64,000 nucleotides of DNA from Auanema rhodensis (GCA_964057225.1 OZ059897.1:5952001-6016000), one strand, 5' to 3'; shown: positions 14,615 through 44,500, counted from the first letter of the stretch. Notes: generated by a model from the letters alone, not told the origin. Numbers and translations are program-made.

Positions 14615-15311
14615 TTAGGTCGTCCAATTGAAACGTAGCCTCCCCCCTATATAGCCTAAAAAAAACTTTGAAAAAACATAAAAGTGCAAAAGTTTTTATT
14701 TTCTTAAATAATTTTCCTGATTCTGCATTCTTCCACTTTTCTTCCAAGTTTCTAATTCCTTCTCTGAAAAATGTTTTAGGTTCAGAATCAAGAAAAAAAA
14801 TTGGAGCTAGATCTGGAGAATAGGGAGAGTGCTTCAAAACATCCCAACCTAACTCCAGAGGCGTCTCTTGTGCTTTCACACAGCAGTGTGGGCGCAAGTT
14901 GTCATGTCAGCAGCGCTGATTTAAGAGTTGCACCGGGTCTCCGACGATCTCCGAGATCCATCTTGCCGGTTTTGAAGCGGACGAACCACTTCTTACATTT
15001 GTTGTAAGCTGGAGAACATTCTCCATAAACATCTTTCATTCTGCGACATGTTTCTTTTGCAGAAACACCATTGTGATAATGAAATGAAAAGATGTGGCTC
15101 ATATGATCATCCATAACGAAAGACACAAAAAAGAGAGCAAAATCAAACACGTTTTCCTGACGAATGAGCTGAGATTAATTAAAAATATTATTTTGTATCC
15201 GTTTAAATATACTCTAATTTAGTTTTATTTCTAAAATTTTACAAATTTTTGAAAAATTAGCATAATTTTTCAAAAAGATTAATGAGACCACGTTTCAATT
15301 GGACGACCTAA
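14615..15311 (-). mobile_element. Internally deleted, non-autonomous mariner (Tc1/mariner) DNA transposon, 697 bp
   Basis: Terminal inverted repeats TTAGGTCGTCCAATTGAAACGT (22 bp perfect; 28 bp with 2 mismatches) starting at 14615 and ending at 15311. TA follows the right end. Minus-strand transposase remnants: Mos1-type HTH (...SAKETCRRMKDVYGECSPAYNKCKKWFVRFKTGKMDLGDRRRPG), HDNLRPH, HSPYSPDLAP, FFREGIRNLEEKW. Confidence 0.95.
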
Positions 15312-16264: not shown

Positions 16265-17984
16265 TTATAACGATACTTTCTTGAGACTTTTACGAATTGC
16301 TTCCGTTTTAGGAAAACATTGCTCTGATAATGCTAGATATTCATCCCGCAATTCAAACCTATAATTTATATTTTAAATATGAATGATATAGTAAAGCATA
16401 TATACCCGTGATCAATAAACTTGACTTCGCTTCCCTTGTGATGTGAAGCAATATGTTGCTTAACTACATCGATTCTCGTAAATCCAACACCACATTCAAC
16501 ACAACTATAATTAACAATAAAATGATGATGGAAAAGGGTTTTATACACATAAACTATTGATTATACTAAATATAATATATTATATAAATCTTTTAAAGTA
16601 CCTGTACTGTTTCCTTGTTGCATGAAGACGTGCATGTCGATCTGCACATTTCAAAAAGTTGCGCACATCTGAGCCAAACGTCACTTTGGTACCACACAGC
16701 TGAAGATTCGTATCAGTGTTATCTTTCGCCATCTAATTTCTACCTGGCATTCGTGTACATCAACTTTCTCTCCTGGTTTAGCTGTATGTTGCCGTTTCCT
16801 TGGCTTACTACGAGCTTTCTTCGTATTTTCTTGGGGAAATAGCTGAATTAGGACATAAAAGATAAACTTAGAACTGATAAGCTATACTGTAGTTCGTAAG
16901 GCAATCAGCTGTTCAAAAATAGATGGGGTCGTATCAAGATTTTCAGTGCCAACAGAGAGATTTGATTTCTATGAAAAAATCGATAATATGAATGAAAGAT
17001 TGAAAGAATGAAAAAGTTACATTAGGAGTGGTCATTTCAGAACTTTCATCGTGTTTCTTCACATCATTTGAAGGAGCATTCTGATTTAAAAGTGAAGACA
17101 ATATCAATGTATACGGACTCAGCTAAATAAATGTAAAATTCACTTAAATATTACATAAATATCAAACTTACTTTATCTACTTCATCACTAATGCAACCAT
17201 CTTCCGAAGCATCGAGTTCCGATTTTATCGAGCAGGAAGGCTCAGCTGTCATATCAGCTTGATTCTCAAACTCATGGAAAATCTCAGTAGGTGTCTAAAA
17301 CGGAAAAACATTCTTGAGTCAAATGAAAACAATATTTACATCGTCGAGCGTTGGAACTTCCACACGTGACTGAGAACTCTTACAGTTTGTACAGGCATTC
17401 TCCACAGATTTAGCAACAACAAAGGACATATAACCATTTTCGAACTAGAAGGAAATATTTTTATTCAACGAATTTACAACCTAGCCGAAATTTTGAAATT
17501 GAGCACTTTAGTTTGAGATGGAAAAGGAAAAAAGAATAGTTAGAATATTCCAAATACGCGTCATAAATAAATCTGGTTATCCAACCAGCACTACGATATC
17601 TTGTTTCAAAAGACCATTTTCTAAAAAAAATCAAAAAAAAAACTAACCAAAATATGGATAGCATTGTTTATTGCTAATCCTTCGCCAATTTCTAATACGA
17701 GCACAACCTACAAAGTTTTTTTCAAACTGGCACTAAAACTGTCTAAAATACTTCATCAGATTTTCTACCATTCCGACTAGTTGGACCACATGATGTACAA
17801 AGATTTTCGATGCTTTCTCCCATTCGAAATGTTGAATATCCATTTTCGAACTAAAATAATTGATTTGAATGGATTTAATGTGAACTTTAAGGTAAAAATT
17901 GTTTTAAAAATTGAAAAAACGAACCAAAATACGTATCATACAGTTAAGACTATCATCGTTTTTTGCATTGATCAAGAGATACAT
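16265..17984 (-). CDS. C2H2 zinc-finger protein of LIN-26/LIR-like architecture with a tandemly duplicated N-terminal module
   Basis: Exons 17984-17925, 17850-17752, 17707-17648 and 17444-17340 are all phase 0 and open. C-terminus: HECQ|LCGTKVTFGSDVRNFLKCADRHARLHATRKQYS|CVECGVGFTRIDVVKQHIASHH...DHG|FELRDEYLALSEQCFPKTEAIRKSLKKVSL*. This is two fingers plus a terminal CFP, as in LIN-26. Confidence 0.8.
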
Positions 17985-18958
17985 AACCGATATTAAGATA
18001 TGGCTTGTCTAATAATAGTATGTTGATCAGTTGAAAACAATAGCCATGCAGGTAGAAGTCAGAACGGAATAATAAGGACGCCCACTAAGAGAGTGATGTG
18101 GCTAGCAGAAATCGATGAGGGGCGGTCGCCGTATGAACAGGACCTGGTCTCCATTAGACCAAACGGAAGACCAGTTTTCGCCTATGCGCCGATCAATTGG
18201 AACACGGTCCTATATACAACTTCAAAACAACAAACATCATGAAAAACAGGAAGTTCGCGAAGGTAGCTGACGATACATCCAGCTGAGCCCCTTTCTCTTT
18301 CTCTCCTTCTTTCCCCCTTTTCCCTCTTTTCTTTGCTCTCTCTCTCTCTCTCTTTATACACATTGTTATTTCTCTATCTTCTGTCCAGTCTATCTGTCTG
18401 TGTCTCTATTTCACATAATATTTGTCAAACCATGGCTACCTGCTTCAAATGCATGCTCTCCTCATTCCTGAATATCCATTTTCCAGATTCCCTCAGTCTC
18501 TTTCACCTGTCGCTCATCTATTCTACCTTCGTAATATTTCTTGAAGACCAGCACAGTGCAGGCGAAGTCAGTGTTAGATCTCACCGTTGACTAGACGGCC
18601 TTAACCAAACGACTGTCTCTCCAAAGTGAATGGTTCAGTTCTCCCTAGCCCACCCCCATTCCTTCCATTGGACATCTTCAAAGTAGATACTTCGATTTTC
18701 AGTCTCCAATTCACCCTCTCATGACTTCGACAACCTCATACCTATTCTTCAGCTTCGTTGATCTTTGAACAGTCTCTTCCGTAGTTGTTCACAGTAGATC
18801 GTTATAACTGGGGACCAGCGCCTGCCTACGCTAGACTGCCTATGCCAGCTAACAAACGAAAGAGAGAATGAAGAAGGATTAGTTTCTGTTCTACTAGGGA
18901 TTTGTGAAAAAATATTCCCCTCTCTTATACTCTAATCAATCATCATAATCACATTAGG

Positions 18959-19670
18959 AGAATATTTTGATTTTAATATTTGCAAATTTCAAACTTTTTT
19001 GAGATTTCTAATAAAAATTTGAAGCTACTTTTCACAATTCTGTTATGATTAATATTTCCCTTTTATCTAATGTTTCTCTCTTTTTATGGGTTCCCTCCCT
19101 TATAAGTTGTCATGAGTCTCATCTTCCGCCAGTTCATGACATTGTCAACTCCTCCATACTGTCTTTTTCAATTTTTCTCTCAACACGTGATTCGTTATAT
19201 GGAAGGACAGATGCGAACCATATGAACAATGGCATCACACTCTTCCATTTTGCTCATTTTCGAAATCCGGAAACTGTCAGGCACTCAATATAAAGCAAAC
19301 AAAACGCCTTTCAGGAGATCGTCTGTCTTAAAATAGATTCAAACGTCTCCGCATAATCTTTTGTTTTCACTCAGTTAATTGTTCCAATTCAATTATATTA
19401 TCAGTACCATTCCTCTATAGTAACTTTTTTTGGTTGAAACGCATTGGAATGCAATCTACAGTTCCCCGCTCTCATTGACGAAGCAAGGAAAGTTCTCAGC
19501 ATGAGCCAACACAAAACGGTTAACAATGGAAAATAGGAAAGAAAAATATCGCATGCTGATGCTGCAGCAACGACTTACGAAAACACACGGAAAAAAGATT
19601 TTAAAAAAAAGTTTTATAAAAAAAATCAGAAGAAAAGTATGTAACATTCTGGCACTCTAAAGATGATAAA
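18959..19670. repeat. Copy 1 of a 712-bp direct repeat
   Basis: Matches 21076-21787 (offset 2117) wherever compared by eye, including homopolymer lengths. The ORF track gives identical translations for both copies. Confidence 0.95.
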
Positions 19671-21075
19671 TATTGGAAACAATGCCCTTCATAATGAATT
19701 TTAGTTTATAAATCTTGTAAGATTTATATTTTTTTATTTCAAAAGTTTTGTCTTTTCATATTGGGTGGCTTCTTTTTTTTTTTGATTTTTCAACTATGGC
19801 TGCATATTAATTTAATTCTCCTTCTCATTACATACGACATACAGGGTCTATTGTTATTGTTTTCACAAACAAATACTCAAAAAACAGTATCACCCGAAAT
19901 TGCTATAAACACCATTTTTACAAAAACAAAGCCACTTTACCTCTTCTTTATATAAATTAAAATAAATTAATGTCATAATTCGTTATGTCTTATCATACTT
20001 CCAGTGATTATCGACGGTCGAACATCCATCTCCTCCCAGTGTTTGTCAGCGCTTGATTCTCCACCCCTTCTTCTGGAAACTCCGACGTTTCTTTCAACAT
20101 CTTATCTTCTGGATTGCGCTGTATTCCAATTCCAAGCACTTTTCTCAAATTATATTGTGTTCAATGCCAGATTCTTTTCGACTTTATCTGGAATTCAAAG
20201 CCTTAGTTTAACTCTTGTTCTAACTTACTTACCAACATCTGGTGAGGTTTAATGGTAAACCAATTAATTCCCAGTTCATTATTTTTTTCTGATAAACAAA
20301 AGAACTCTTTATAACTTAAATCTATAATAATAACCTGACATATCCAGCAAACTACAAGATATGATGGGATCACATTGTTAGCAAAGTTTAAGATGTCAAA
20401 ACTCCTTAAAATTAAAATAGTTCAAAAGTTTTATTTGAAATGTGAATCAACATCTATGATTTATTTTGTATATAGTTTAATGTGATCAATTTTTAGAAAT
20501 TAATTTTAAATTATTGAAAAACGTATCAGAAACAAATAATTCAAGAATACTGTCTTTACAACATTTTACTAATATTCATGATTAAAGCTCACATTTACAA
20601 CTTGATCATCATAAAAATAAAAATAATTAAGTTTTATCTTGTGTATGTTCAACTTCATTAGCATATAGTATATGTATTCAATTACCACGTGAGTTACTTC
20701 ACGTAAAATAATATAATTTCCTGTACGAGTTAATTCTGATGCAGTATTTTCTCTATTTACAATAATTCGTTTTCTCGTATATTTCGAGGGCATAAATAAC
20801 TTTTTCTTAAATATTTAGATTTATGATTCTTTCAACTTGAGCAAAACTAAAATATTTTTATTTTACTATACTTCTATTTTCTCCATTACAATATAAATTC
20901 ATATAATTGTAGTGTGGGAGAATAGTATTATTTCCTGCACTTGAAGGACGTGAAGCGGTTGTTCCTCAGTTCATGTAACTTATTACCGCGCGCTTACAGT
21001 TTCAAAGAGATTTATATGATATTGAATAGCTACGAAGAATGATCCTCGATGCAATATTGATTTGATATCTTTATT

Positions 21076-21787
21076 AGAATATTTTGATTTTAATATTTGC
21101 AAATTTCAAACTTTTTTGAGATTTCTAATAAAAATTTGAAGCTACTTTTCACAATTCTGTTATGATTAATATTTCCCTTTTATCTAATGTTTCTCTCTTT
21201 TTATGGGTTCCCTCCCTTATAAGTTGTCATGAGTCTCATCTTCCGCCAGTTCATGACATTGTCAACTCCTCCATACTGTCTTTTTCAATTTTTCTCTCAA
21301 CACGTGATTCGTTATATGGAAGGACAGATGCGAACCATATGAACAATGGCATCACACTCTTCCATTTTGCTCATTTTCGAAATCCGGAAACTGTCAGGCA
21401 CTCAATATAAAGCAAACAAAACGCCTTTCAGGAGATCGTCTGTCTTAAAATAGATTCAAACGTCTCCGCATAATCTTTTGTTTTCACTCAGTTAATTGTT
21501 CCAATTCAATTATATTATCAGTACCATTCCTCTATAGTAACTTTTTTTGGTTGAAACGCATTGGAATGCAATCTACAGTTCCCCGCTCTCATTGACGAAG
21601 CAAGGAAAGTTCTCAGCATGAGCCAACACAAAACGGTTAACAATGGAAAATAGGAAAGAAAAATATCGCATGCTGATGCTGCAGCAACGACTTACGAAAA
21701 CACACGGAAAAAAGATTTTAAAAAAAAGTTTTATAAAAAAAATCAGAAGAAAAGTATGTAACATTCTGGCACTCTAAAGATGATAAA
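21076..21787. repeat. Copy 2 of a 712-bp direct repeat
   Basis: Matches 18959-19670. Confidence 0.95.
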
Positions 21788-22069
21788 ACTATAACAACCT
21801 CAAAATTTAACAAGAAATAAATAAAGCAAAGTTCTGGTAAAAATATGTGATTACAAATTTGATAATACTAATTGTCTAAGACAAGGAAGGCATAAATTGC
21901 GATAAAAAGTTGGATGTAAGAAATTGTAATATTAACAGACATGGTATACAAATTATTAATGAGATTATTTGACATAAAGCAGATAGACAGAAAAATTAAA
22001 AATGAGATTATGTCAAGAAAGATCAATACAAGTTATCAAACAAATATAAAAATCGGTGCCAAGGGTACA

Positions 22070-23524
22070 TTAAGTTCTAACCTCGTTCAGCCATTTCAAT
22101 TTATCTTTTCTTCGTCTATTTTGGAACCAGACTTTAACCTGAACAACGTTGATTATTATAATTTAATAATAAATGATGGTTACTCGTAATGCGTCAATTC
22201 CTAAACTCTCCATAAGTTGTTTCTTTTTGAAAGGATCAGCACAAGCATTAGGATCTTCGTTATAAAAACTTTCAAGAATTTCCTAAACATACGAACCATA
22301 TGATTCTCATTAAATATTGAAAACCAACCAAATCTCTTGTGTTGTAAACTATACGCCCTCTTCGAAGTTTTCCATTAGCCGATACTTAACTTGTACTATT
22401 AAAAGACGATATTCAATAAGTAGTACTTACCTACGTGACCGAGATTTCGACTTCCCGATTTTTTGGATGAATTTATATCATTATTAGCTGAGCTTGATAT
22501 CTATGAAAAAAAGTTAGATAATTAATTTAGAACTCCAACTCACTTCTGGTGATGAGCATTTGGAAATAGTTAGAGGTTGATCTAGAGGAGAAGGTGTTAG
22601 GCGATTGTAATGTGAGAATACGTTAGGCGTTGAAGATAATAGACAGGCTAGTAATGAAGGATGTAGGGTTTCAAAATTTGTTTCATTCTGAAAATAATTT
22701 GTTCAACAATGAAATATTAAAACAACTCACAGCATCTGAGTCAGCAATGGCATTAGCCGCATCTTCAACATCCGTATCAATAGAACTACCTTCTACAGCT
22801 TTTTCTTTACCAGTAGTAGCAGACGGAGAAGGTTGAGGTGTTTCTTCCTACAAATAAATCATCAAATAAAGCTTATGATAAAACGTAAGGTTTAATTTAA
22901 TTAAAAATAGAACACGATACCCTATCTTCCGATGACACTGACACCGTGGAAGAGGTAGATGATCCTTCACCAATCAAAACGTTAGGAGCAACAGTTGTTA
23001 AGACATTCTGAGCAACAGCCTACAAAAGGTTAAATATAGAGGTACAGCAAAGACAAAATATGATATTGATTGAAAAACAAATTAAAATAGCATTATACCT
23101 GCATTCCCATTTGTAAAAGTCCCGATTCCTTTACAGCAGATAAAACATCCTTACTATTACTGGTTGCTAAGTCTTGGTAAGTCTCCATAAGAGGGATTAA
23201 AGGATATAAGGAAGCAGGGACATGAGTTAGCTTAATCAAAATTGTAATCAACAAATGCTAATATAATAATAAAAATACCTGATCAATGGTGATATGTTTA
23301 GAATCTTCCATTTTTACATTAGGCTTGGTGTCTGAAGTTGGAAGTGTGGAACAACGAGGACATAACTTTTCCACTCGATCAACTATAGAAATAGGAACGC
23401 TATACTTATTAACCTGAATATAACATAGTTAATAAAGATTAATTATCAAAAGATTTCTAACCAATCCGGATATAATTTCCCCCATTTCAAATAGATGGTC
23501 TTCCAAATTCACAAGCAGAAACAT
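22070..23524 (-). CDS. Divergent Q50 homeodomain transcription factor (tentatively CEH-58-like)
   Basis: tttcag-A-ATG start at 23524. About 10 exons splice in frame, ending KLRRGRIVYNTRDL|EILESFYNEDPNACADPFKKKQLMESLGIDALR|VKVWFQNRRRKDKLKWLNEVRT*. WFQNRR is the helix-3 signature. Orthology is from memory only, so no symbol is given. Confidence 0.88.
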
Positions 23525-25310
23525 TCTGAAACTGTTTGATAAAAAAACATCAATAACATATGAAGAATAAGCAAAAGGATAGCGTCTGGATAGAAAGGCA
23601 TCGAACTATCCCTTCTGTTGACTAATCATTGAATTAAGTAGGCAAGCCTATGCATTTTGGGGCAATTTATCGTTCTCTAAGAGAGGCGGTCAGGGTCTCT
23701 TAATTGCCATTCAATCGATTGATGAATGCTCACAACACGATGCATCATCTAAGTTCTAATAAACAAAAAAAAGGAGAAAAGAATAATAAAAATTAATTGT
23801 CTATTACAAAAGCATTAGATCGGATGAAAAAATGGCTTAAGACATAGCGCACTAGTACGAGTCTGGTAATTTTTGAATTGAATAAGTAAGATCAGGATTA
23901 GTCGGCTGGAATGATCATTAAACTGTCGGTTGTAATTGGCTAACTTGCACTTTTAAAATCAAAAGGATGTGTATATACTGGTAGATGACTATGTGTGAAC
24001 ATTAGAAATAGATTTTTCACTAGTCATCATTTAAAAAAACAGTCAAAGATGATACCGAAATGAGGAATGAATGGCACTAACCAACACAACTAACAACGCT
24101 GATGAATGCCAAGGCAAAATTAATCAAAATCATCTTGGCATGTACGGAGGCTTTGTGATCCGCTTATGTAATAATCATAATCCGGAAGAGCTTAATTGAG
24201 CAAGTAGTTAGAAAAGCAGAGTTGATTCTGGGCTCGTAATCATTCCAGGAAAGAAAGGATAAAAATAACTTGTTAGGAGGGAATAAGAATTATTTTCCGG
24301 AAAACAAAGTCTTACATATAAAGGTCCACACGGTTCGTTTTACAAAGACAGGTTTAACAACATTAAATATTAACAGGAATAATTCAATTAATCGCTTATT
24401 CTGATAGGTAAAAAGAAAAAACCGATCGATGATGATTGAATAGCCTTAGTGGCAGCAGCCGTGAATGTAAAAGTTATAGGAGAGAAAGAAGATGCAAAAG
24501 AAGAACGAAATGAGGAAAATGGAACTAGTAAAAGAAAGAAAGAAAACGAGGCGGAGTGGATGGAGAACCCAGAATTTCGAACGGAACAAAGCGATTGATA
24601 TGGTCCAGGATTGAGGGATATAGTGAGCAATAAGAGAAGGACAATGGCCTAGTATTATTGGGGAACAAACGATATCCTTTACAATGTTTATGCGAGGAAT
24701 GGGGATAGGAAGAGAGAAAAGCTGTTGGAGCATTATTAGATCCAGATATACAGCCTATTTGACCCGATGATGATGTTGATGTGATGGCGGATGATGAAGA
24801 AGCTCTTTTCCGTCTCAGTCGCAAAAGCTTTTCTATTAATCATGCATAGCATATTATCTCGAGCTAAATGTACTAATACCCATGACTAATAGCAAAAGTA
24901 GCACCTCGAGAGAATCTAAATAAGTTGGAAGTAATGTTGATGATGAGTTATCTTGGACAGATAGGTCAATACTTCAAAGAATATTAGCTTAAGAAGCACA
25001 AACATGAGACTATACTAACGACTTCCAAACTGACATATTGTCAATTAAATAAAAAAAGTAAATATTAGACTAATTAGCGTTGGAGTAATTGCGACCAACG
25101 AGCAGAAGCAACAGCACCCGGGTTGACAAGGCCACACAAAGAAAGCATATAAAAGCATAACGTATCTTTTATTTCGAACAGACTGAGTAAATTAGTAAGG
25201 GACACTACGAGAGAGCAAAAGAGCAAGAGAAATAGGAAAACATAGAAAAGGTAAAGTTAATTGGCTGCAAAAACAAGTTTTAAGCTAAATTATTTAAAAA
25301 GACGTATGAA

Positions 25311-25400
25311 CATATATATATATAAATATGTGAATATATATATATATATATATATACATACATATATATATACGAATAAGTATATATGCATACATACATA
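25311..25400. repeat. Imperfect (TA)n/(TACA)n microsatellite
   Basis: Visible run of tatatata/catacata. Confidence 0.8.
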
Positions 25401-28006
25401 TTTGGAGATGCATATGAGGCTCTGCTAGATCCTCAGTACTAATCCGACATTTCGCATAATGCAGATGATCGTGGAAAGAAAAGGTCCCGCCCATCGATGG
25501 ACCCACTCTCGTAAGGAGGGGATCATCATCGTGTTAATTGAAAACTTTTGCAATTAGACCCCGAACTATGCTGATTTAATTAAATAAATGGACTGGTTTT
25601 ATCATTCTGGCAATATGTAGAGGCTATGGCTAAAGAATTCAAAGTTGTAGGGGATCCCATAAGATACCCTATAAGATGAAGTGAATGCGTAATAAGAGCG
25701 TGACTTATAATCAGAAATAACAAATTTAATCAACATGTTAAAAATGACAAAAAAGAAAATAACAAATTTAATAAACATGCTAATACTAATTGCCCCAAAA
25801 AATGTTATGTTTATTAGTTAAACTTTAAATAGACCTTTATTAGAAATCAATCGATTGACCCGTAATTTTATAACGCATTAGCTCGTGAATGGGAAAAATT
25901 AATAGCAGTATTGGAGGAATGGCAAGAATTAGGCAATATATTGTATAATAATAAATCACTTAGAAACACATTAGAAAGCTGACAAACATACATTTTGCAC
26001 ATAAAAAATTGGCATGCGGGGCTTTATGTTGTAAATTGGAGAAGATTACTAGTCGACTAAATATCTGCTAATTGCATGCCGGGTCAGTTGCACCGACCGA
26101 CCGGTCAGTATGCCGAAGGAGCAAACAATCCCACTATATCAATATGCAAATTCCATTAGCATATCCACGTGAATACAGATCGTGTCATTCGCGGCTCTAT
26201 TGATGTGGAAATCAGTTGAAAGCAAGAAGTGGATTGTATCTGAGGCAAAGTTTCTGTTACTGTACATGTTCGGTTGCATTCTTTAAGCGTAGTGCCATTT
26301 ATAGTTGTTCTCTCCCACATACCAGTAGAAATAACTTGTGTTTTTCTAATTTTCTTATACATATTGGAACATCATCGAGATTTGAGTTAAAAGAAGGCTT
26401 TCATCGGAAGTTTCTGGTGCCGGATATTTGCAATCAGTTAATTCCAAATAGGCTTGATATTTCATTTCAAGGGAAAGCTTTCTGGCTTTTTCCAGTCGTA
26501 AATAAGTTAATTAATTATAGTAGGATTACATTTATAATAGAAAGAATTGAGAGCATGTAAAGCTGTTATTTAGAAAAACAAGAAAAATTGAGGAGATTAT
26601 GATTATAAGATATAATTTTGAAGAAAATATATATAGCATTGAAACGATGTTCAAAATTAAAATGAATTGAAGAGCAATGTAGATTAAGTATAGGCTCTGA
26701 AAATGTTCATCGAAAAGATCAACATCGTAGTAGTAAGTTCTTTATATGATAATCGATTCTATTAATTAAACAATGTACATTCAAATTGCGTTCGTTCTAA
26801 TTGCAACAAAAGCTAATTAACAAGAAAATTATCGGAGCCATACATTGGGCAGAACATAAAACCAGAATAGCTAAGAAATAGCAAAGAAGAGGCAGAAATG
26901 TCCAACAAATATCCAGTTGTCGGCTAGCACTTTGTAGCTCCTGTAAGGCTATTCTGATTCATGGGCAACCTTTGCAATCTTTGATCTTTGATGACAGCTT
27001 TTTCATATTTTTGCATTTGTGTTCATCCATTCAGCACAATTTAAACAGAAAATAGACTAAAACTATATAAAATGTTCCAATACATTTCCACCACTAAGTA
27101 TGTATGTATCAACTTTATAATTAATATAGCTTGAAAATGAGGAGAAGATTGAAAACATCTATGAAAAAGCTTAGCCGAATATAAATCAGTTGTCAGGGAA
27201 ACTGAGGATTTGTCAGAAGTAAAAGCAATATAGATTGCTACACTTCTTATAACAACTCTAGTAATGATGAAGATCTGTAAAACTACAAATAAAAATCATT
27301 AATGTAGCCAATGAAAGAAAGAACAAAAAAAAAGATAATTTATGTTAAAATGCTTTGAAATCTGGACTATGTCAAGTACAACAATGATATAAAGTAATAT
27401 ATATGTGTGGGTGTATATTATAAATGTGTATATATGTATATCTTAAAGGATACTATAAAAAAAGTAAAGGATATCAAGGATAATAATAATTATTATAATA
27501 ATAAGGATGATAATAATAATGGTAAAAAGGATTTTATCTCATACATAAAGGCAAAGGCCTGGTAAAACAAAGAAATTGCTGATTCGGTTAAATAGGTTTT
27601 TATGCAAGTAAAGGCAATTATGTAGGCACATTCCGGTAAGTGATAGGATGGAAGGCAAGAGAAAATACACGAAAAGAATAATAAGGCAAGTTGAATATCA
27701 CACTGAGAAATTAAAACCAAAAAAATGAAAACAAATATGAAGAACAAAAATTATAAAAATGTTACTATACATGCATATATAGATTAATCTATACATCTAT
27801 TTATTTATAGATATAAAGATATATATATGTATATGAATTTTATAAATTGTATACAGAAGGAATGAATTTTTGAAGTGAAAATACTAAAAATTTAGGAATG
27901 GTAGGGCAATCGACGGATTGCTTCATGGGCTAGGTTTATCGAGATATGTAATCCACTAGGAATGGGATCAGGGGTGAGAATGCTTTTGGAACTATTTTCA
28001 AGAGAC

Positions 28007-31000
28007 CTAAGCCTCAACTTCGTTTTCAGTTGTAGAAGTCTCCTTAGGAGCGATCTCCTCGCTTTGCCATCCGCGAGTTTTAGCTTTCACATAATCCGGG
28101 AAACAAGCATGAAGCATAGCGTTCCATTCAGCTCTCATTTCGTCGGTACTGAAAATTTTTTAATAAAGATTTATTGAATGGGAATCATGACTTACGTTAT
28201 ATCGAAAGCATCATCGCATCTATGCCCACTTTGGCGGGCGTGTGAGATAACATTACTCTTGATTCCATTGAAATCACAATCGAAACACTGCAATAGAACA
28301 TGGATTAAACTATGTTTAACAAGACAATATTACCTGGTAGGGTTTGCTCTCCGAGTGAATCATGATTACATGACGTAGAAGGTTCCAACGTGATCCGGTG
28401 GAATTAAGGGTGGTTGGTTTACCGCACAACTAAAAAGGAACCAGGTTTTGACAGGTTGGTTCAAGATTGAACTTACAGCACACTTGTAAGTAGCCTTGCA
28501 ATGAACTCTTCCGTAGTTCTTTCCACGTCCGAATCTGCTCTCTTCTAACTCTCCATTTGTCATCCATCTGTGTTTCTTAGTGGCAGGACTGTAGTCGGAT
28601 CTTCTCCGAGAGTTAGTCTCTTCAATTTGGGCTGACTGTAATAACTATTTAAGAGATAAGTAATACGAACAAAAAATATTTACCCCGAAAGCACTTCCAA
28701 GAACGGGATTCAAAAGATGAATCATGGAAGCTCTAACTTGTTCATCTGATGTGCCCAATCCGAAGTCAACGCTATCGGAAGACTCGGTTTTAACTTCAGT
28801 GTCTTCATCATTCTGATCTTTTTTGATTGAGTCAAACTCATTAATTTCTGGAGATCTAGAAATATAACTCATAAATATCCATCAAAACTGTTGAGATTTC
28901 TTACACTCTTTCCTCAGTTTCAGTTACTGAAGCGACGTGTCCCAATATAATTCTTTGAATCTCTAACTGTTGGCGTTCTTGCTCCTTCTGTTGCTCGAGA
29001 GTCTGTCGGCTTTTATCCTCCAAGATTTTAGTAAGTGCCGAATGATTATTAGCCACTGGGGTGGAAGGAGTAGGAGCTCTCTGAAATTGAAGAATTATTG
29101 AAAGTAACTAATTTTATATTAAATTATGAAATAATTGAAGCGGAATAAATTAAGAGCGACCGGAAGTACACCTAATTACTTAAGGTGTGAGAATGAAAAT
29201 CTGTAGTTGACAACAGGCTCAACATTCGAAATGTTCACGCTGTCAACTAGTTCACCTAACATTCATCAAGCTATCAAAGAATCACTTAGTATTCAAGGAA
29301 CTCGTCTAACTACAACGATGGTAAGTGACACTAATAGTATCAGATTAAAGTTTATTTCAGGAAAGTCGTCCACAAACTATGGCAACCTTTCAGGAAACTT
29401 ATCATCGTGATGTGATTTCATATTTCTTTCTACGTTTTGATGATTTATACTGTTTTAGCATCATAACTCAGACGATTCAAAGAGAACAATTGTTCTGGGC
29501 AAAACTGAAAGACAAACTGCTATCAAAATCGAAAGTTTAGAACGGCGTTTGCAAGCTAATGAGAAGAATAGACGAGAAACTGAGGCTGAGTTGGAAACAT
29601 TTAAAAGGAAATACCAAGTAAACATTTCAAATTTTCTAAATTTCTTTGTATAATTGCGTAGAAAGTTCACGGAGACAACGAGCAATTACGAAGCGAAAAT
29701 GTAGAAATAAAGAAGGAATTAGAAGAATTTCGAATAGCTGAAAAGGATTTTAATGTTAAAATAAAGTATAACTAAGCGAACAAAATGCAATGCTTATGTT
29801 TTCTTTTCAGAGGGGACGCCATTTTGCTAGCCGAATTAACGGAAAAACTTGATAATATTGAGAGTGATTCTAAGGAAATAAAGGAGCAAATAGCAGCAAT
29901 TTTGTTAGAAAACGAAAACGAATTGAATATATTTGAAATGTCTTCAAATAATATTTTAAAACTTGTAGCACATGAAAGACAAGTTCGTCGACTAAAAGAG
30001 AAAGAAATTGAGGAACTTGATATAAACTTGAAACAGGTAAAAATCTTAAATATTATGTTATTTTGTGTTTAGACATCTGATCAACTGGCAAAAAGTCATG
30101 ATCACGTAATGAAGCTACTGCAACAAGTCGAGTTGGTTACTAAATCAAATCTCGAAAGAATCGATATTCAAAAAGAAGTTTACATTTTCATCATGAAGGT
30201 TATTTCAAAATATGCATTTAGGAAATTGAAATTGAAACAGAAGCTGCTAATCACTTAAAGACCAATTTCAAAAAAATGGAAGAGGAAGCAGCTGAGCGTA
30301 GAAAAAACCTTGGTTAGTTCATTGAGTGATTTAGTCATCACCGATCAAAAAAATATTTAGATGTCATGACAGCTGAGCTGCGATTGTTGAAGAAACAAAA
30401 GCGTGATTTTAAAAATAACGAAAGAAGTAACCAAATTCTTCTGCAATCATTGGAGACTGAGAGACAATCGTTTCTGGAAACGTTGTCAACGTTGTTAGGG
30501 TTAGAAGTACCTGTTGATGGAGCCGAAATCAAAAGGAGAATCAGGTACTTCAAATTAAAGTTTATGACTCACTGGAAAGGAATGCTGATTTTGTTTAGGC
30601 AACTACAAAAAGAATCAGATGATAACAAAACTATACAAACAAAGTTGGAAAGGGATTATAATGAAATTGAGGAACAACTTCTTGATCAAGCTAAGCAACA
30701 ACGTAATGCTTTATTTCGGGCAAGGTACGAATGAAGTATCTTTATTAGTACTAAAGAGTTTTTCAGAACAGCTGAAGAGGAACAGTCTGTTTTACAGGAG
30801 AAGATTCAAAGCTTGCTTCAGGAAATTAAAGCATCAGATCTTGTTATCAAAGAAAAAGATGCAAAGATAGAGCAGTTTGAAAGTATCCTTAAAAAGGTTC
30901 AAAACCAGTATTCCTTTCTATGAATTAAGAGTTTTTTAGATCAATAGCTCAATCGGATTACAAACCGAAAACGGCCCCAAAGAACTGATAGATCGCATTC

Positions 31001-32054
31001 AAGATCTGGCTATCTATGAGAGTCTACTTCAGAAAACAAGACCTAACCCGGTAAGCCATGCTCAATTAAACTAGAATAGTCGAGTGTATTAAGACAACTC
31101 TTCAAAAACTTGCTTCATCTGGAAAACCAAGTATGGTATGTTCTCGAACGCATGAAATGGGGTTAAATAGATCGTTACAGCATGCTGTAGCTCATACACT
31201 CTGCGGTAAGACAGCATGGGACAGATGGGACCAACATCTTCTTACAGCGGTCAGGCTTGAATCCATCAAAGCAGCCGATAATGAAAAAGTCTTGAGAGTT
31301 AGCCATCCATAGTATGGACCATTGTTTAACCACATTTTTTTAGAGAAAGTTGAGTGAAAAGGAGAAGAAAATCAGAGAGTTGGAAAAGGAAAGAAAGGAG
31401 GTCAAGTCACAAAAATTTTCCCGAAACAGTGAAGGAAGAGTAAGTTCAATGGGTGCCTGATGAATATTGACAAGTTCTGTTTCAGCTTTGTTCAACACAG
31501 ACAAAACAGAAAATGGAACCAGGGACACAAAAAGATGAAGAAACATAAGCCAAAATATACACTGAATCCAATAAAAATTATGAAAAACTAACCACAAGAG
31601 TATTGCTATTACTAAATCCATTTGATTGATCTGAAGAAGGGGATGAACGCTTTGATAGAGCTTGGGCAATATCGTTTATCGAAACCTAAACGTTGGCAAT
31701 TAGAATCAATTAATCTCATATAGGAAGTAATTTACCTTTGGTTTCCCATTTGTTGACGTGGAAGAAGATGTAGAGGAAGTAGAGGAAGAAGATGAAGATG
31801 ATGATGAGTTGGTTGCTGTGTTAGCATTACTTGAGCCATTAGTAGTTGTACCATTAATGGAAGTCTTGTATTTCAAAGATGGATGATCACACAAATCAGA
31901 AACAACTGCGAATTTATCAAAGCCATGAGTTATCTTAAGGGAAAATAACATTAGATAGAGTGGCTATGGATAGAAAACTCACTAAATATTGAACAAGAGT
32001 CATTGTGGCAGTCGTTGTGCTTACCTCCACCACTACATATTTCGACTGCAACAT
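28007..32054 (-). CDS. lin-26: LIN-26 epithelial/hypodermal C2H2 transcription factor
   Basis: N-terminus MLQSKYVVVEVSTTTATMTLVQYL|ITHGFDKFAVVSDLCDHPS. Also DEQVRASMIHLLNPVLGSAFG and RFGRGKNYGRVHCKATYKC. Fingers: KPTTLNSTGSRWNLLRHVIMIHSESKPYQ|CFDCDFNGIKSNVISHARQSGHRCDDAFDIT|TDEMRAEWNAMLHACFPDYVKAKTRGW. TAG at 28007-28009. All match C. elegans LIN-26 as I recall it. Confidence 0.93.
29318..31548 (+). CDS. Long coiled-coil protein nested antisense in a lin-26 intron (weakly CCDC170-like)
   Basis: ATG-only exon (29318-29320, followed by gtaagt), then ~14 short exons of E/K/L/Q heptad sequence, e.g. KIESLERRLQANEKNRRETEAELETFKRKYQ and LETERQSFLETLSTLLGLEVPVDGAEIKRRIR. Ends LCSTQTKQKMEPGTQKDEET*; AATAAA at ~31570. 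Confidence 0.8.
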
Positions 32055-32463
32055 CTGCAAAAATAAAATAAGAGATTGAAGAAACTGAATTATAAAACAA
32101 GAAAGAATATGGTAAAGTAGAAGAAGAGCATATATAAGAAATACAGAAGACATTGAAATGGGGTGGCATCAATAAACGACATCGAGAGATAAGAAAATGA
32201 GGACGTTAGAACCTCGCCCGAATAGGTTATTCAGCGATATTATTCCATTTTACTAACAATAACCTTGTCCTCTTACAATTATTAAGAAGGGAGTAGTCTG
32301 GATTTGCATCCTGATCTTCTACGCTAACTGAGTTCCATCTCTTTCAAAGTTCACTGATGTGCAGAAGTAATAGGGATGGTATGGCGAGAAGAAATGAAAT
32401 GCAATGTGGGATTCAAATAAGCAAAGTAGGTCACACCGGCGCAAGGGAGGCTCGTTCTTTACT

Positions 32464-32476
32464 ATTTATATATAAA
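32464..32476 (-). promoter_or_regulatory. Candidate TATA box for lin-26, ~410 bp upstream of the acceptor that abuts the ATG
   Basis: Minus strand reads TTTTATATATAAATAG, followed by a GC-richer segment. Function is inferred. Confidence 0.35.
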
Positions 32477-32479
32477 ATT

Positions 32480-44500
<12,021 letters not shown>

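What the first reader, a model, noticed from the sequence alone, without database searches (positions are those of the whole stretch)
16265..32054. Three clustered transcription factors (two C2H2, one homeodomain) share an unnamed N-terminal module with an invariant intron
Seen: four copies align when spliced by hand (| marks the intron). lin-26: MLQSKYVVVEVSTTTATMTLVQYL|ITHGFDKFAVVSDLCDHP (exon 32054-31983). Homeobox: MFLLVNLEDHLFEMGEIISGL|VNKYSVPISIVDRVEKLCPRCS (23524-23462). ZnF copy 1: MYLLINAKNDDSLNCMIRIL|FENGYSTFRMGESIENLCTSCG (17984-17925). ZnF copy 2: VVLVLEIGEGLAINNAIHIL|FENGYMSFVVAKSVENACTNCK (17707-17648). Each has a hydrophobic strand ending E/N, an amphipathic helix ending in Leu, a phase-0 intron exactly after that Leu, and a second strand; 3 of 4 then have CxxC. 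All three genes are co-oriented, and no other confident same-strand gene lies between them. Known: LIN-26 and LIR proteins are described as sharing a C2H2 motif; I know of no named domain shared with a homeodomain protein. Inference: a nematode-specific oligomerisation module, analogous in role to BTB, SCAN or ZAD. A half-ferredoxin-like beta-alpha-beta unit with only two Cys would need a partner to complete a sheet and a Zn site, so LIN-26, the homeoprotein and the ZnF protein could form combinatorial heterodimers. Pairwise identity is low, so the homology call rests on residue pattern plus intron position.
Basis: partly seen in the sequence, partly recalled or inferred. Interest (0 to 1): 0.9.

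Follow-up and report, generated by a model that had tools for sequence, protein, structure and literature searches.

The report
Shared N-terminal domain in worm regulators

Summary
All four two-exon copies are at the stated coordinates with GT-AG introns in phase 0 after the conserved Leu. RNA contigs confirm the lin-26 intron.

A profile of three copies, searched against 1.84 billion proteins, found 11 significant hits. All belong to two families: CEH-58-type homeodomain proteins (C. elegans NP_496234.3) and a LIN-26-like 2xC2H2 family (C. elegans NP_496235.2). The module sits at or near the N-terminus.
- **Homeodomain versus zinc-finger module:** hhalign probability 96%, E 4e-9.
- **LIN-26:** its conserved N-terminus aligns more weakly (probability 61-75%, P about 1e-4 to 1e-5) but in the same register, with the intron in the same column, and it lacks the CPxC pair.
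- **Intron:** kept in all three families across Caenorhabditis, Auanema and Trichostrongylus.
- **Gene order:** the homeobox and zinc-finger genes are neighbours in Caenorhabditis, Diploscapter, Auanema and Trichostrongylus.

AlphaFold2 predicts a strand-helix-strand unit. Pfam has no entry for it, solved structures gave no match, and I found no paper describing it.

The proposed role as a dimerisation or zinc-sharing module is plausible but untested. Zinc sharing with LIN-26 is unlikely. This is a real, apparently undescribed, Rhabditina-restricted domain of transcription factors.

The parts
44177..44206 (-). 3' end of a non-coding lin-26 5' exon, donor CT|GTATGT. It is spliced over a 12.1-kb intron to the acceptor just before the ATG at 32054. 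Its upstream limit was not determined.
   Evidence: A loose end at 32054 in runs X1-X3 maps uniquely to 44177-44206. There is an in-frame stop 9 codons before the ATG.
31983..32054 (-). lin-26 coding exon 1, the first half of the module (strand plus helix): MLQSKYVVVEVSTTTATMTLVQYL.
   Evidence: It differs from Auanema sp. JU1783 by only 5 synonymous third-position changes. RNA joint 31933|31983.
31934..31982 (-). The conserved phase-0 intron inside the lin-26 module (49 nt).
   Evidence: RNA joint in X1-X3. The intron sequence has diverged from JU1783 while both flanking exons are conserved. The same position and phase occur in C. briggsae and C. auriculariae lin-26.
31736..31933 (-). lin-26 exon 2. 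The second half of the module (ITHGFDKFAVVSDLCDHPSLKYK) is followed by a Ser/Thr-rich linker.
   Evidence: RNA joints 31683|31734 (cut +2) and 29080|31593. Translation. It matches the KVSINEIASALSRK motif of LIN-26 orthologues.
28007..29080 (-). lin-26 exons 3-8: linker, two LIN-26-type zinc fingers and the ...EWNAMLHACFPD tail, ending at the stop codon.
   Evidence: All joints are confirmed by RNA, and exon 5 starts at 28644. 93-100% protein identity to JU1783.
23462..23524 (-). Homeobox gene exon 1, the first half of the module: MFLLVNLEDHLFEMGEIISGL.
   Evidence: The orthologue P0002 of Auanema sp. JU1783 starts the same way.
23414..23461 (-). The conserved phase-0 intron inside the homeobox gene's module (48 nt).
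   Evidence: The same position and phase occur in C. elegans ceh-58, C. bovis, T. colubriformis and JU1783.
23279..23413 (-). Homeobox gene exon 2. The second half of the module (VNKYSVPISIVDRVEKLCPRCS) is followed by linker.
22070..23230 (-). Homeobox gene exons 3-10. The homeodomain is split over the last three exons (22384-22070).
   Evidence: Pfam PF00046, E 6.9e-12.
17925..17984 (-). Zinc-finger gene exon 1, module copy 1, first half: MYLLINAKNDDSLNCMIRIL.
   Evidence: JU1783 P0031 is collinear.
17752..17850 (-). Zinc-finger gene exon 2, module copy 1, second half: FENGYSTFRMGESIENLCTSCG...
   Evidence: The intron at 17851-17924 is in phase 0.
17648..17707 (-). Zinc-finger gene exon 3, module copy 2, first half: VVLVLEIGEGLAINNAIHIL.
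   Evidence: The tandem copy is also present in JU1783 P0031/P0001 and in no other genus seen.
17340..17444 (-). Zinc-finger gene exon 4, module copy 2, second half: FENGYMSFVVAKSVENACTNCK...
   Evidence: copy 1 versus copy 2, E 3e-7. The intron at 17445-17647 is in phase 0.
16265..17294 (-). Zinc-finger gene exons 5-11: linker with LILSSLL, two LIN-26-like zinc fingers and the ...EYLALSEQCFP tail, ending at the stop codon.
   Evidence: C. elegans members of the two zinc-finger families align over fingers and tail: blastp P0034 versus LIN-26, 30% over 105 aa, E 1e-6.

Best explanation
**What it is.** The window, from an Auanema-like rhabditid nematode, carries lin-26, a ceh-58-type homeobox gene and a LIN-26-like 2xC2H2 gene in a row on one strand. 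Each protein starts with the same domain of about 42-45 residues.
- The domain reads: a hydrophobic strand (M-[YF]-h-L-h-N/E-h), a helix ending ...h-h-x-x-L, a second strand, then a short turn.
- In the homeodomain and zinc-finger families the turn carries an invariant [LI]-C-P-x-C.
- In LIN-26 the turn is D-L-x-D-H-P-S instead.
- The domain is encoded by a two-exon cassette, cut by a phase-0 intron directly after the helix Leu.

**How it arose (inferred).**
- The domain was already present in the ancestor of the LIN-26-like zinc-finger proteins. LIN-26 and the NP_496235-type family are collinear: module, linker, two fingers, CFP tail.
- A tandem partial duplication then placed the 5' cassette of the zinc-finger gene in front of a homeobox. 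This gave the CEH-58 family, which has stayed next to its donor gene.
- In Auanema the same cassette was duplicated once more, inside the zinc-finger gene.

**What it does (inferred, not shown).** It is probably a protein-protein contact domain, giving self-association, pairing between the paralogues, or docking of a shared cofactor. The two invariant cysteines are too few for a zinc site within one chain, so they may complete a metal site across two chains.
For: **The module occurs in two other families across genera.**
- The exhaustive hmmsearch with a three-copy profile found 11 hits at E <= 1e-3. All are CEH-58-type homeodomain or LIN-26-like zinc-finger proteins. The module starts at residue 1 in eight; P0005 and P0009 carry an N-terminal extension in their models, and P0001 is a truncated tandem model.
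- Orthologue sets gathered through the DNA-binding ends all carry it. They cover Caenorhabditis, Diploscapter, Auanema, Heterorhabditis and strongylids.

**Homeodomain versus zinc-finger module.**
- hhalign gives probability 96%, E 3.9e-9, over 46 of 48 columns.
- The observed score is 40.6, against a maximum of 16.0 in 200 column shuffles.
- It is the only region the full-length profiles share.

**LIN-26.**
- 25 retrieved LIN-26-type proteins start M(L/Q)(Q)SKFVVVEV..TMTL[VI][EQ]YL|[IV]T[HN]GFDKFAV..DLxDHPS.
- Against the zinc-finger module: probability 61-75%, P 2e-5 to 8e-5. The score is 23.5, and 0 of 200 shuffles reach it (maximum 20.5).
- The match is collinear with the finger-and-tail match, which has probability 91%.

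**Intron.** It has the same phase and the same aligned column in all three families, in C. elegans, C. bovis, C. briggsae, C. auriculariae, T. colubriformis and two Auanema species. Other introns vary.

**Constraint.** The first 45 residues or so are about as conserved as the DNA-binding domains, while the linkers are not. lin-26 exon 1 differs from JU1783 only by synonymous changes.

**One transcript.**
- A 1,141-nt C. elegans transcript contig encodes the whole 327-aa CEH-58, with module and homeodomain together.
- RNA joints confirm lin-26 here.

**Neighbouring genes.** The homeobox and zinc-finger genes are adjacent in C. elegans, C. bovis, D. pachys, T. colubriformis and Auanema. lin-26 sits next to the homeobox gene in C. 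auriculariae.

**Fold.** AlphaFold2 gives mean pLDDT 78 for the zinc-finger/homeodomain module, with a helix at residues 10-22. For LIN-26 it gives pLDDT 64, with strand 6-9, helix 13-25 and strand 31-34.
Against: - The LIN-26 link is only moderate. There is no signal against the homeodomain family alone, probability is 41% against the combined profile, and one column shuffle reached a score of 20.5.
- LIN-26 lacks the Cys pair, so the three modules need not share one mechanism.
- No evidence of any kind was obtained for dimerisation, zinc binding or a partner.
- In the zinc-finger/homeodomain monomer model DSSP calls no strands. This fits a need for a partner, but it also fits a weak model.
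- Splicing of the homeobox and zinc-finger first introns in this genome was not checked with reads. It rests on gene models and orthologues.
- Absence outside Rhabditina rests on a three-sequence profile and word-limited searches.
Confidence: 0.7

Rival explanations
1. Only two of the three families truly share the module. The LIN-26 N-terminus would be an unrelated conserved strand-helix-strand segment that resembles it by chance, with the intron coincidence accidental.
For: - There is no hhalign signal between LIN-26 and the homeodomain family.
- Probability is only 41% against the combined profile.
- Leave-one-out searches within the window rank lin-26 no better than random fragments.
- LIN-26 lacks CPxC.
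- A short hydrophobic strand-helix-strand is a common pattern.
Against: - Against the zinc-finger family the match has P 2e-5 to 8e-5 and exceeds all 200 column shuffles.
- It starts at the N-terminus in both families, and it places the phase-0 intron in the same column.
- It is collinear with the significant finger-and-tail homology of the two families.
- MAFFT reproduces the same register unaided.
Confidence: 0.2
2. The module is a regulatory tail rather than an association domain. It could be an N-terminal degron or stability element, a localisation signal, or an intramolecular lid on the DNA-binding domain. The CPxC would serve as a redox or metal sensor within one chain.
For: - The module sits at or within a few residues of the N-terminus, and the initiator Met and residue 2 (Y/F) are conserved. 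This is what N-terminus-dependent recognition would require.
- CEH-58 acts in a stress-signalling pathway (PMC9956597).
- No interaction data were found.
Against: - C. elegans-group CEH-58 proteins carry 7 extra residues before the module, and the second Auanema copy is internal. A free N-terminus is therefore not essential.
- About 40 well-ordered residues with a confident helix are more than a linear degron needs.
- No other conserved metal ligand exists in the chain (invariant columns).
Confidence: 0.15
3. The homeobox protein's module is an annotation artefact: 5' exons of a zinc-finger gene wrongly joined to a separate downstream homeobox gene.
For: The two genes are adjacent and co-oriented in Auanema and Trichostrongylus, which is the usual setting for merged gene models. 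No reads were laid on this gene in this window.
Against: - A 1,141-nt C. elegans transcript contig encodes the full CEH-58, with module and homeodomain together.
- In every genome examined the neighbouring zinc-finger gene has its own complete module.
- The ten exons here join in frame with 43-79-nt GT-AG introns.
- In C. elegans and C. bovis the two genes are on opposite strands.
Confidence: 0.02

Closest known systems
LIN-26 / LIR family of nematode C2H2 zinc-finger proteins (Dufourcq et al. 1999; LIR-3/MOAG-2, PMC5364375; LIR-2, bioRxiv 10.1101/2020.03.28.013060)
   Same: Two of the three genes belong to it. One is the lin-26 orthologue. The other is a LIN-26-like gene with two atypical fingers and the ...E(E/W)..L..CFP tail.
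   Different: The papers I could read describe the family as sharing only the C-terminal fingers. The N-terminal module, its intron, and its presence in a homeodomain protein are not mentioned. The founding paper, PMC1460593, was not available. Whether LIR-1, LIR-2 and LIR-3 carry the module was not determined; no copy was seen in the 10 kb upstream of C. briggsae lin-26.
CEH-58 (C07E3.6), a 'divergent' C. elegans homeobox gene (Hench et al. 2015, PMC4448998; PMC9956597)
   Same: The window's homeobox gene is its orthologue, with the same homeodomain and the same N-terminus. The C. elegans hit lies next to a diverged homeobox duplicate, as described for ceh-58 and ceh-57.
   Different: Neither paper, as far as my term searches of them showed, describes a domain outside the homeodomain or any link to LIN-26-like proteins. 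No paper in the searchable library mentions both ceh-58 and lin-26.
N-terminal association domains of zinc-finger transcription factors: ZAD (zf-AD, insects), SCAN, BTB/POZ, KRAB
   Same: The architecture matches: a small folded N-terminal domain, a long disordered linker and a C-terminal DNA-binding domain. It is lineage-restricted, and ZAD also uses Cys pairs. This comparison comes from my own knowledge of those families.
   Different: - No sequence match to any of them in Pfam.
- About 45 residues, compared with 75-120.
- Only one Cys pair.
- Three single-copy families rather than a large expansion.
- Shared between two different classes of DNA-binding domain.
Inter-chain zinc sites built from one CxxC per chain (Rad50 zinc hook; CD4/CD8-Lck zinc clasp)
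   Same: A single invariant C-P-x-C with no other conserved ligand in the domain. This is the logic of a metal site completed by a second chain. The comparison is from my own knowledge and serves only as a functional analogy.
   Different: There is no sequence or fold relationship and no evidence of metal binding. LIN-26 lacks the pair.
ANC1 homology domain (AHD, PF17793) of AF9/ENL/TAF14
   Same: A helix-G-H-strand stretch resembles it: AF9 LQQIVNLIEETGHFHIT against LQNVVQLLFAHGHRQLS. Ten of 28 module sequences give sub-threshold Pfam hits, best E 0.015.
   Different: The score of 15.7 bits is below the 27-bit cutoff. hhalign probability is 5%, and 75 of 5,000 shuffles do as well. There is nothing for the homeodomain or LIN-26 families. 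I treat this as chance.

Membership tests
LIN-26 orthologue group (for the gene at 28007-32054) | Two LIN-26-type fingers (YKCALCGKPTTLNSTGSRWNLLRHVIMIH; CxDCDFxGIKSNVISHARQ) plus the TDEMRAEWN..CFPD tail. | tested here: met
   The exon translations match C. elegans 'Transcription factor lin-26' P0065 and CBR-LIN-26 P0071, both retrieved with these exons.
LIN-26 orthologue group | Conserved N-terminus M..SKFVVVEV..TMTLxxYL|xTxGFDKFAV..DLxDHPS. | tested here: met
   It is spliced as read, according to RNA.
LIN-26-like (LIR-type) zinc-finger family (for the gene at 16265-17984) | Two atypical C2H2 fingers followed by the ELREEY..L..CFP tail, homologous to LIN-26. | tested here: met
   Model. Orthologues P0031/P0001 (JU1783) and C. 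elegans NP_496235.2. Family profile against LIN-26: probability 91%, P 9e-7. blastp E 1e-6.
Homeodomain proteins, CEH-58 orthology group (for the gene at 22070-23524) | A homeodomain passing the Pfam PF00046 threshold. | tested here: met
   45.5 bits against a cutoff of 22.9.
Homeodomain proteins, CEH-58 orthology group | Orthology to C. elegans ceh-58 rather than to another homeobox gene. | tested here: met
   The JU1783 counterpart P0002, syntenic with the window gene, is a full-length hit in the search that retrieved C. elegans NP_496234.3. That gene sits next to a diverged homeobox duplicate, as described for ceh-58/ceh-57. The gene name itself is my inference from that paper.
The new N-terminal module (homeodomain and zinc-finger type) | M-[YF]-h-L-h-N ... 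L | ... [LI]-C-P-x-C within about 45 residues of the start, with a phase-0 intron after the Leu. | tested here: met
   Met by the homeobox copy and both zinc-finger copies.
The new N-terminal module (homeodomain and zinc-finger type) | The same features in LIN-26. | tested here: inconclusive
   Register, strand-helix-strand order and intron column are met. The CPxC pair is absent, and there is no direct signal against the homeodomain family.
ZAD / BTB / SCAN / KRAB | A match to the Pfam model of the domain. | tested here: not met
   None of these families is listed, even at E up to 10.
ZAD / BTB / SCAN (functional class: dimerisation domain) | Demonstrated self-association. | not testable with these tools
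   No multimer prediction is offered and no interaction data were found.
AHD (PF17793) | A score above the Pfam gathering threshold, or a significant profile match. | tested here: not met
   Best 15.7 bits against a cutoff of 27. hhalign probability 5%.
Inter-chain zinc site (zinc hook / clasp type) | Zinc bound by two Cys from each of two chains. | not testable with these tools
   Only the ligand count argues for it: C38 and C41 are the only invariant potential ligands.

The most novel reading that the evidence does not exclude
The CPxC module would be a zinc-bridged pairing device that joins the CEH-58-type homeodomain protein to its neighbouring LIN-26-like zinc-finger paralogue. It could also pair each protein with itself. 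The result would be a composite homeodomain-plus-zinc-finger DNA reader. That dependence would help explain why the two genes have stayed neighbours across Rhabditina. LIN-26, the epithelial fate regulator, would keep a zinc-free version of the same contact surface. The tandem copy in Auanema would be an internally paired form.
Probability: 0.2. Interest if true: 0.75.

Novelty: new variant of a known kind. Interest (0 to 1): 0.62.

Why it matters
LIN-26 is a long-studied master regulator of epithelial fate in C. elegans, and CEH-58 was recently tied to inter-tissue stress signalling. For both, only the DNA-binding domain is annotated.

A second domain, as conserved as the DNA-binding domain and shared between a homeodomain family and a zinc-finger family, gives a concrete handle on how these factors are regulated or partnered. 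It is directly testable in C. elegans by knock-in deletion, yeast two-hybrid and zinc assays.

It is also a clean example of exon-cassette shuffling between classes of transcription factor. The donor and recipient genes are still side by side, the marker intron is retained in all three families, and one lineage shows a further duplication of the same cassette.

It deserves a domain-family entry. It also corrects gene models: the JU1783 lin-26 model lacks the N-terminal exons, and the C. auriculariae homeobox model has a spurious extension.

Tried and rejected
- **Searches within the window.** Leave-one-out HMM searches showed that only the two zinc-finger copies find each other. No further copy exists in the window or in seven related loci.
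- **Pfam.** Exon pieces, modules and full-length hits gave nothing on the module.
- **Solved and predicted structures.** PDB by sequence gave only trivial CxxC hits at E >= 0.2. Foldseek against PDB gave 0 hits and AlphaFold DB Swiss-Prot gave none. VIA-align wide gave a best Z of 2.6.
- **ESM Atlas.** Feature scores were 0.6 or lower, which is uninformative.
- **AHD lead.** Followed and rejected.
- **A second shared motif in the linkers** (SALELL / AALQN / ASMIHLL). Not supported by full-length profile comparison.
- **Literature.** Dufourcq et al. 1999 could not be read. A search for T09F3.1 found nothing, so the C. elegans zinc-finger gene is given by accession only.
- **Spliced proteins.** Full-length spliced proteins of the window have no reference, so I did not type them. 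Only module-sized peptides (70 aa or fewer) were typed.
- **Reaching LIN-26 orthologues.** Several alignments of exon references gave scrambled profiles. An alignment of database proteins plus exon references worked.
- **Loose-end sequences.** Two RNA loose ends, at 26598 and 29710, have no match in the window.

Full report
**1. What is in the window**

The stretch is AT-rich nematode DNA. It is syntenic, at 68-89% nucleotide identity in conserved blocks, with contig CALQYR020007453.1 of Auanema sp. JU1783, so it comes from a related Auanema-like rhabditid.

Reading the minus strand by hand gave three complete gene models. All introns are GT-AG, mostly 43-79 nt.
- A LIN-26-like gene at 32054-28007.
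- A homeobox gene of ten exons at 23524-22070. Its homeodomain passes Pfam PF00046 at E 7e-12.
- A 2xC2H2 gene of eleven exons at 17984-16265. Its fingers and ...EYLALSEQCFP tail resemble those of lin-26.

Each has a phase-0 intron (49, 48, 74 and 203 nt) directly after a Leu.

**2. Is the resemblance more than chance?**

Inside the window alone the answer is only partly.
- Leave-one-out HMMs find copy 2 of the zinc-finger gene from copy 1 (E 3e-7, second half).
- The homeobox copy ranks only in the top 1%.
- lin-26 ranks at random.
- Shuffle tests of Smith-Waterman scores give z of 4-5 for the homeobox copy against zinc-finger copy 1 and for lin-26 against both zinc-finger copies; homeobox versus copy 2 and homeobox versus lin-26 give z 1.7.

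The decisive evidence is comparative. I searched a profile of the two zinc-finger copies and the homeobox copy (A1) exhaustively against 1.84 billion representative proteins. It returned 11 hits at E <= 1e-3, with the module beginning at residue 1 in eight of them; P0005 and P0009 carry extended N-terminal models and P0001 is a truncated tandem model. They fall into two families.
- **Homeodomain proteins:**
  - Auanema sp. JU1783 P0002
  - C. bovis
  - C. auriculariae
  - Diploscapter
  - Haemonchus
  - Trichostrongylus
  - C. elegans NP_496234.3/Q17792
- **LIN-26-like 2xC2H2 proteins:**
  - JU1783 P0031/P0001
  - C. elegans NP_496235.2/G5EDA0
  - Necator
  - Haemonchus
  - Heterorhabditis
  - Diploscapter
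  - others

The C. elegans homeodomain protein lies next to a diverged homeobox duplicate and has orthologues throughout the genus. By the description in PMC4448998, that makes it ceh-58.

The orthologue sets were collected through full-length searches driven mainly by the DNA-binding ends, yet every complete member carries the module.
- Family-against-family hhalign gives probability 96%, E 3.9e-9, over 46 of 48 columns.
- The score of 40.6 compares with a maximum of 16.0 in 200 column shuffles.
- With full-length profiles it is the only shared region.

**3. LIN-26**

LIN-26 orthologues could not be reached with single exons because of the length filter. I built an alignment of two database zinc-finger proteins plus four lin-26 exon references (A6). 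It retrieved C. elegans 'Transcription factor lin-26', CBR-LIN-26 and about twenty others.

All begin M(L/Q)(Q)SKFVVVEV..TMTL[VI][EQ]YL[IV]T[HN]GFDKFAV..DLxDHPS. The window gene is therefore the lin-26 orthologue, and its first two exons encode a highly conserved N-terminus.

Evidence that this N-terminus is a divergent copy of the module:
- Against the zinc-finger module the LIN-26 profile gives probability 61-75% and P 2e-5 to 8e-5.
- The score of 23.5 is reached by 0 of 200 column shuffles, with a maximum of 20.5.
- The alignment starts at the N-terminus of both families.
- It is collinear with the significant finger-and-tail homology (probability 91%; blastp E 1e-6).
- MAFFT reproduces it unaided.

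Evidence against:
- Against the homeodomain family alone there is no signal.
- Against the combined profile the probability is 41%.
- LIN-26 lacks the Cys pair.

I rate LIN-26 as a divergent member at about 0.75-0.8.

**4. The intron**

Walking annotated proteins along their loci shows a phase-0 intron after the same Leu in every case examined.

| Gene | Species | Junction |
|---|---|---|
| ceh-58 | C. elegans | INQL\|VADYG |
| zinc-finger gene | C. elegans | VQLL\|FAHGH |
| homeobox gene | C. bovis | same position and phase |
| homeobox gene | T. colubriformis | same position and phase |
| homeobox gene | Auanema sp. JU1783 | same position and phase |
| lin-26 | C. briggsae | VEYL\|VTHGF |
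| lin-26 | C. auriculariae | same position and phase |

- Other introns differ between species. C. briggsae lin-26, for example, has a 924-nt second exon.
- In the hhalign register the LIN-26 intron falls in the same column as in the zinc-finger family.
- One database prediction (P0051) reads through this intron at exactly that point.

**5. Expression and gene structure here**

Four RNA-type runs, held as assembled contigs, were laid on 26201-32200.
- They confirm every lin-26 intron I had drawn, including intron 1 (joint 31933|31983, depth 107-137 in three runs).
- They add a 93-nt exon at 31593-31685, which encodes the conserved VSINDIAQALSK motif.
- They move the start of exon 5 to 28644.
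- They show that the acceptor in front of the ATG is joined to a non-coding exon ending at 44177. An in-frame stop lies nine codons before the ATG, so the module is the true N-terminus.

lin-26 exon 1 differs from JU1783 only by five synonymous changes, while the intron has diverged.

For the homeobox protein, a 1,141-nt C. elegans transcript contig encodes the entire 327-aa CEH-58. This rules out a merged-gene artefact.

**6. Gene order**

The homeobox and zinc-finger genes are neighbours in several genera.

| Species | Arrangement |
|---|---|
| Auanema | co-oriented |
| T. colubriformis | co-oriented |
| D. pachys | consecutive locus tags on one contig |
| C. bovis | convergent |
| C. elegans | divergent, 15.8 kb apart, no gene called between |

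lin-26 directly precedes the homeobox gene in Auanema and in C. auriculariae, but not in C. briggsae. The tandem second module is confined to the two Auanema genomes.

**7. Structure and known families**

Predicted structure:
- AlphaFold2 on the homeodomain-plus-zinc-finger alignment gives mean pLDDT 78, and over 80 for residues 1-40. It has a helix at 10-22 flanked by extended segments that DSSP does not pair.
- The LIN-26 alignment gives pLDDT 64, with strand 6-9, helix 13-25 and strand 31-34.

Comparison with known families:
- No match was found in Pfam.
- No match was found in PDB sequences, Foldseek PDB or AlphaFold DB Swiss-Prot.
- The wide structural search gave a best Z of 2.6.
- A sub-threshold resemblance to the AF9 AHD was followed and rejected.
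- Papers on LIR-2, LIR-3 and CEH-58 describe only the DNA-binding domains.
- No searchable paper mentions ceh-58 together with lin-26.
- The founding LIR paper was not available.

**8. Interpretation**

*Shown:* a conserved N-terminal domain of about 45 residues, encoded by a two-exon cassette with an old phase-0 intron. [quoted passage not shown] It is as conserved as the DNA-binding domains, while the linkers are not.

*Inferred about origin:*
- The module is ancestral to LIN-26-like proteins.
- It was copied from the zinc-finger gene onto the adjacent homeobox gene. The homeodomain module is close to the zinc-finger module, not to LIN-26's.
- It was duplicated again within the Auanema zinc-finger gene. 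In the window and in JU1783 the cassette starts and ends in phase 0, which allows in-frame duplication.

*Inferred about function:* it is a protein contact domain. The only invariant potential metal ligands are C38 and C41. A zinc site, if there is one, would therefore need a second chain. This cannot apply to LIN-26. None of this was tested.

**9. Verdict**

- The homology is strong for two families and moderate for the third.
- The mechanistic reading is plausible but open.
- The domain appears to be undescribed.

Noticed in passing
window 32055-44176 (minus strand): A 12.1-kb intron in the lin-26 5'UTR covers the GC-richer part of the window (40-45% GC against about 30% elsewhere). Blocks at 32416-32822 and 33673-33947 are conserved with Auanema sp. 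JU1783. This recalls the long conserved intron reported upstream of lin-26 in Caenorhabditis and may hold regulatory elements.
   Followed up: partly
window about 29200-31500, + strand: A coiled-coil protein gene is nested on the opposite strand inside the 2,512-nt lin-26 intron (29081-31592). It is annotated at 428 aa in JU1783. It has low RNA depth (2-6) and five GT..AG joints. It has no Pfam family. A loose end at 29710 has no match in the window.
   Followed up: partly
window 18959-19670 and 21076-21787: A 712-bp direct repeat at 100% identity, 2,117 bp apart, lies between the homeobox and zinc-finger genes. JU1783 has a single copy at L001:11963-12151. It is either a very recent duplication or an assembly artefact.
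   Followed up: partly
window 14905-15174, minus strand: A fragment of a mariner/Mos1-type transposase (Pfam HTH_48, E 4e-12).
   Followed up: no
window 17021-17122 (zinc-finger gene exon 6): An LxxLL motif (LILSSLLNQ) is conserved in JU1783. LIR-2 of C. elegans is reported to bind NHR-25 through LxxLL motifs (bioRxiv 10.1101/2020.03.28.013060). Other genera have ...SALELL... at the corresponding place.
   Followed up: no
L001:4845-5829 (JU1783) and L008:13086-22652 (C. auriculariae): These public gene models appear wrong at the 5' end. The JU1783 lin-26 model (P0054, 250 aa) lacks the three N-terminal coding exons. The C. auriculariae homeobox model (P0009) carries a 46-residue extension before the module's Met. 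The JU1783 zinc-finger gene has two models (P0001 and P0031) that differ in the first exon.
   Followed up: partly
window 26401-26598: A short low-depth RNA contig (depth 2-5 in all four runs) ends at 26598 and continues into sequence not found in the window. It could be an unannotated exon, possibly a 5'UTR exon of the homeobox gene, or a repeat.
   Followed up: partly
L002:13956-15877 (C. elegans ceh-57): The diverged duplicate next to ceh-58 shows no trace of the module in a six-frame HMM scan. The duplicate therefore lost it or never had it.
   Followed up: partly
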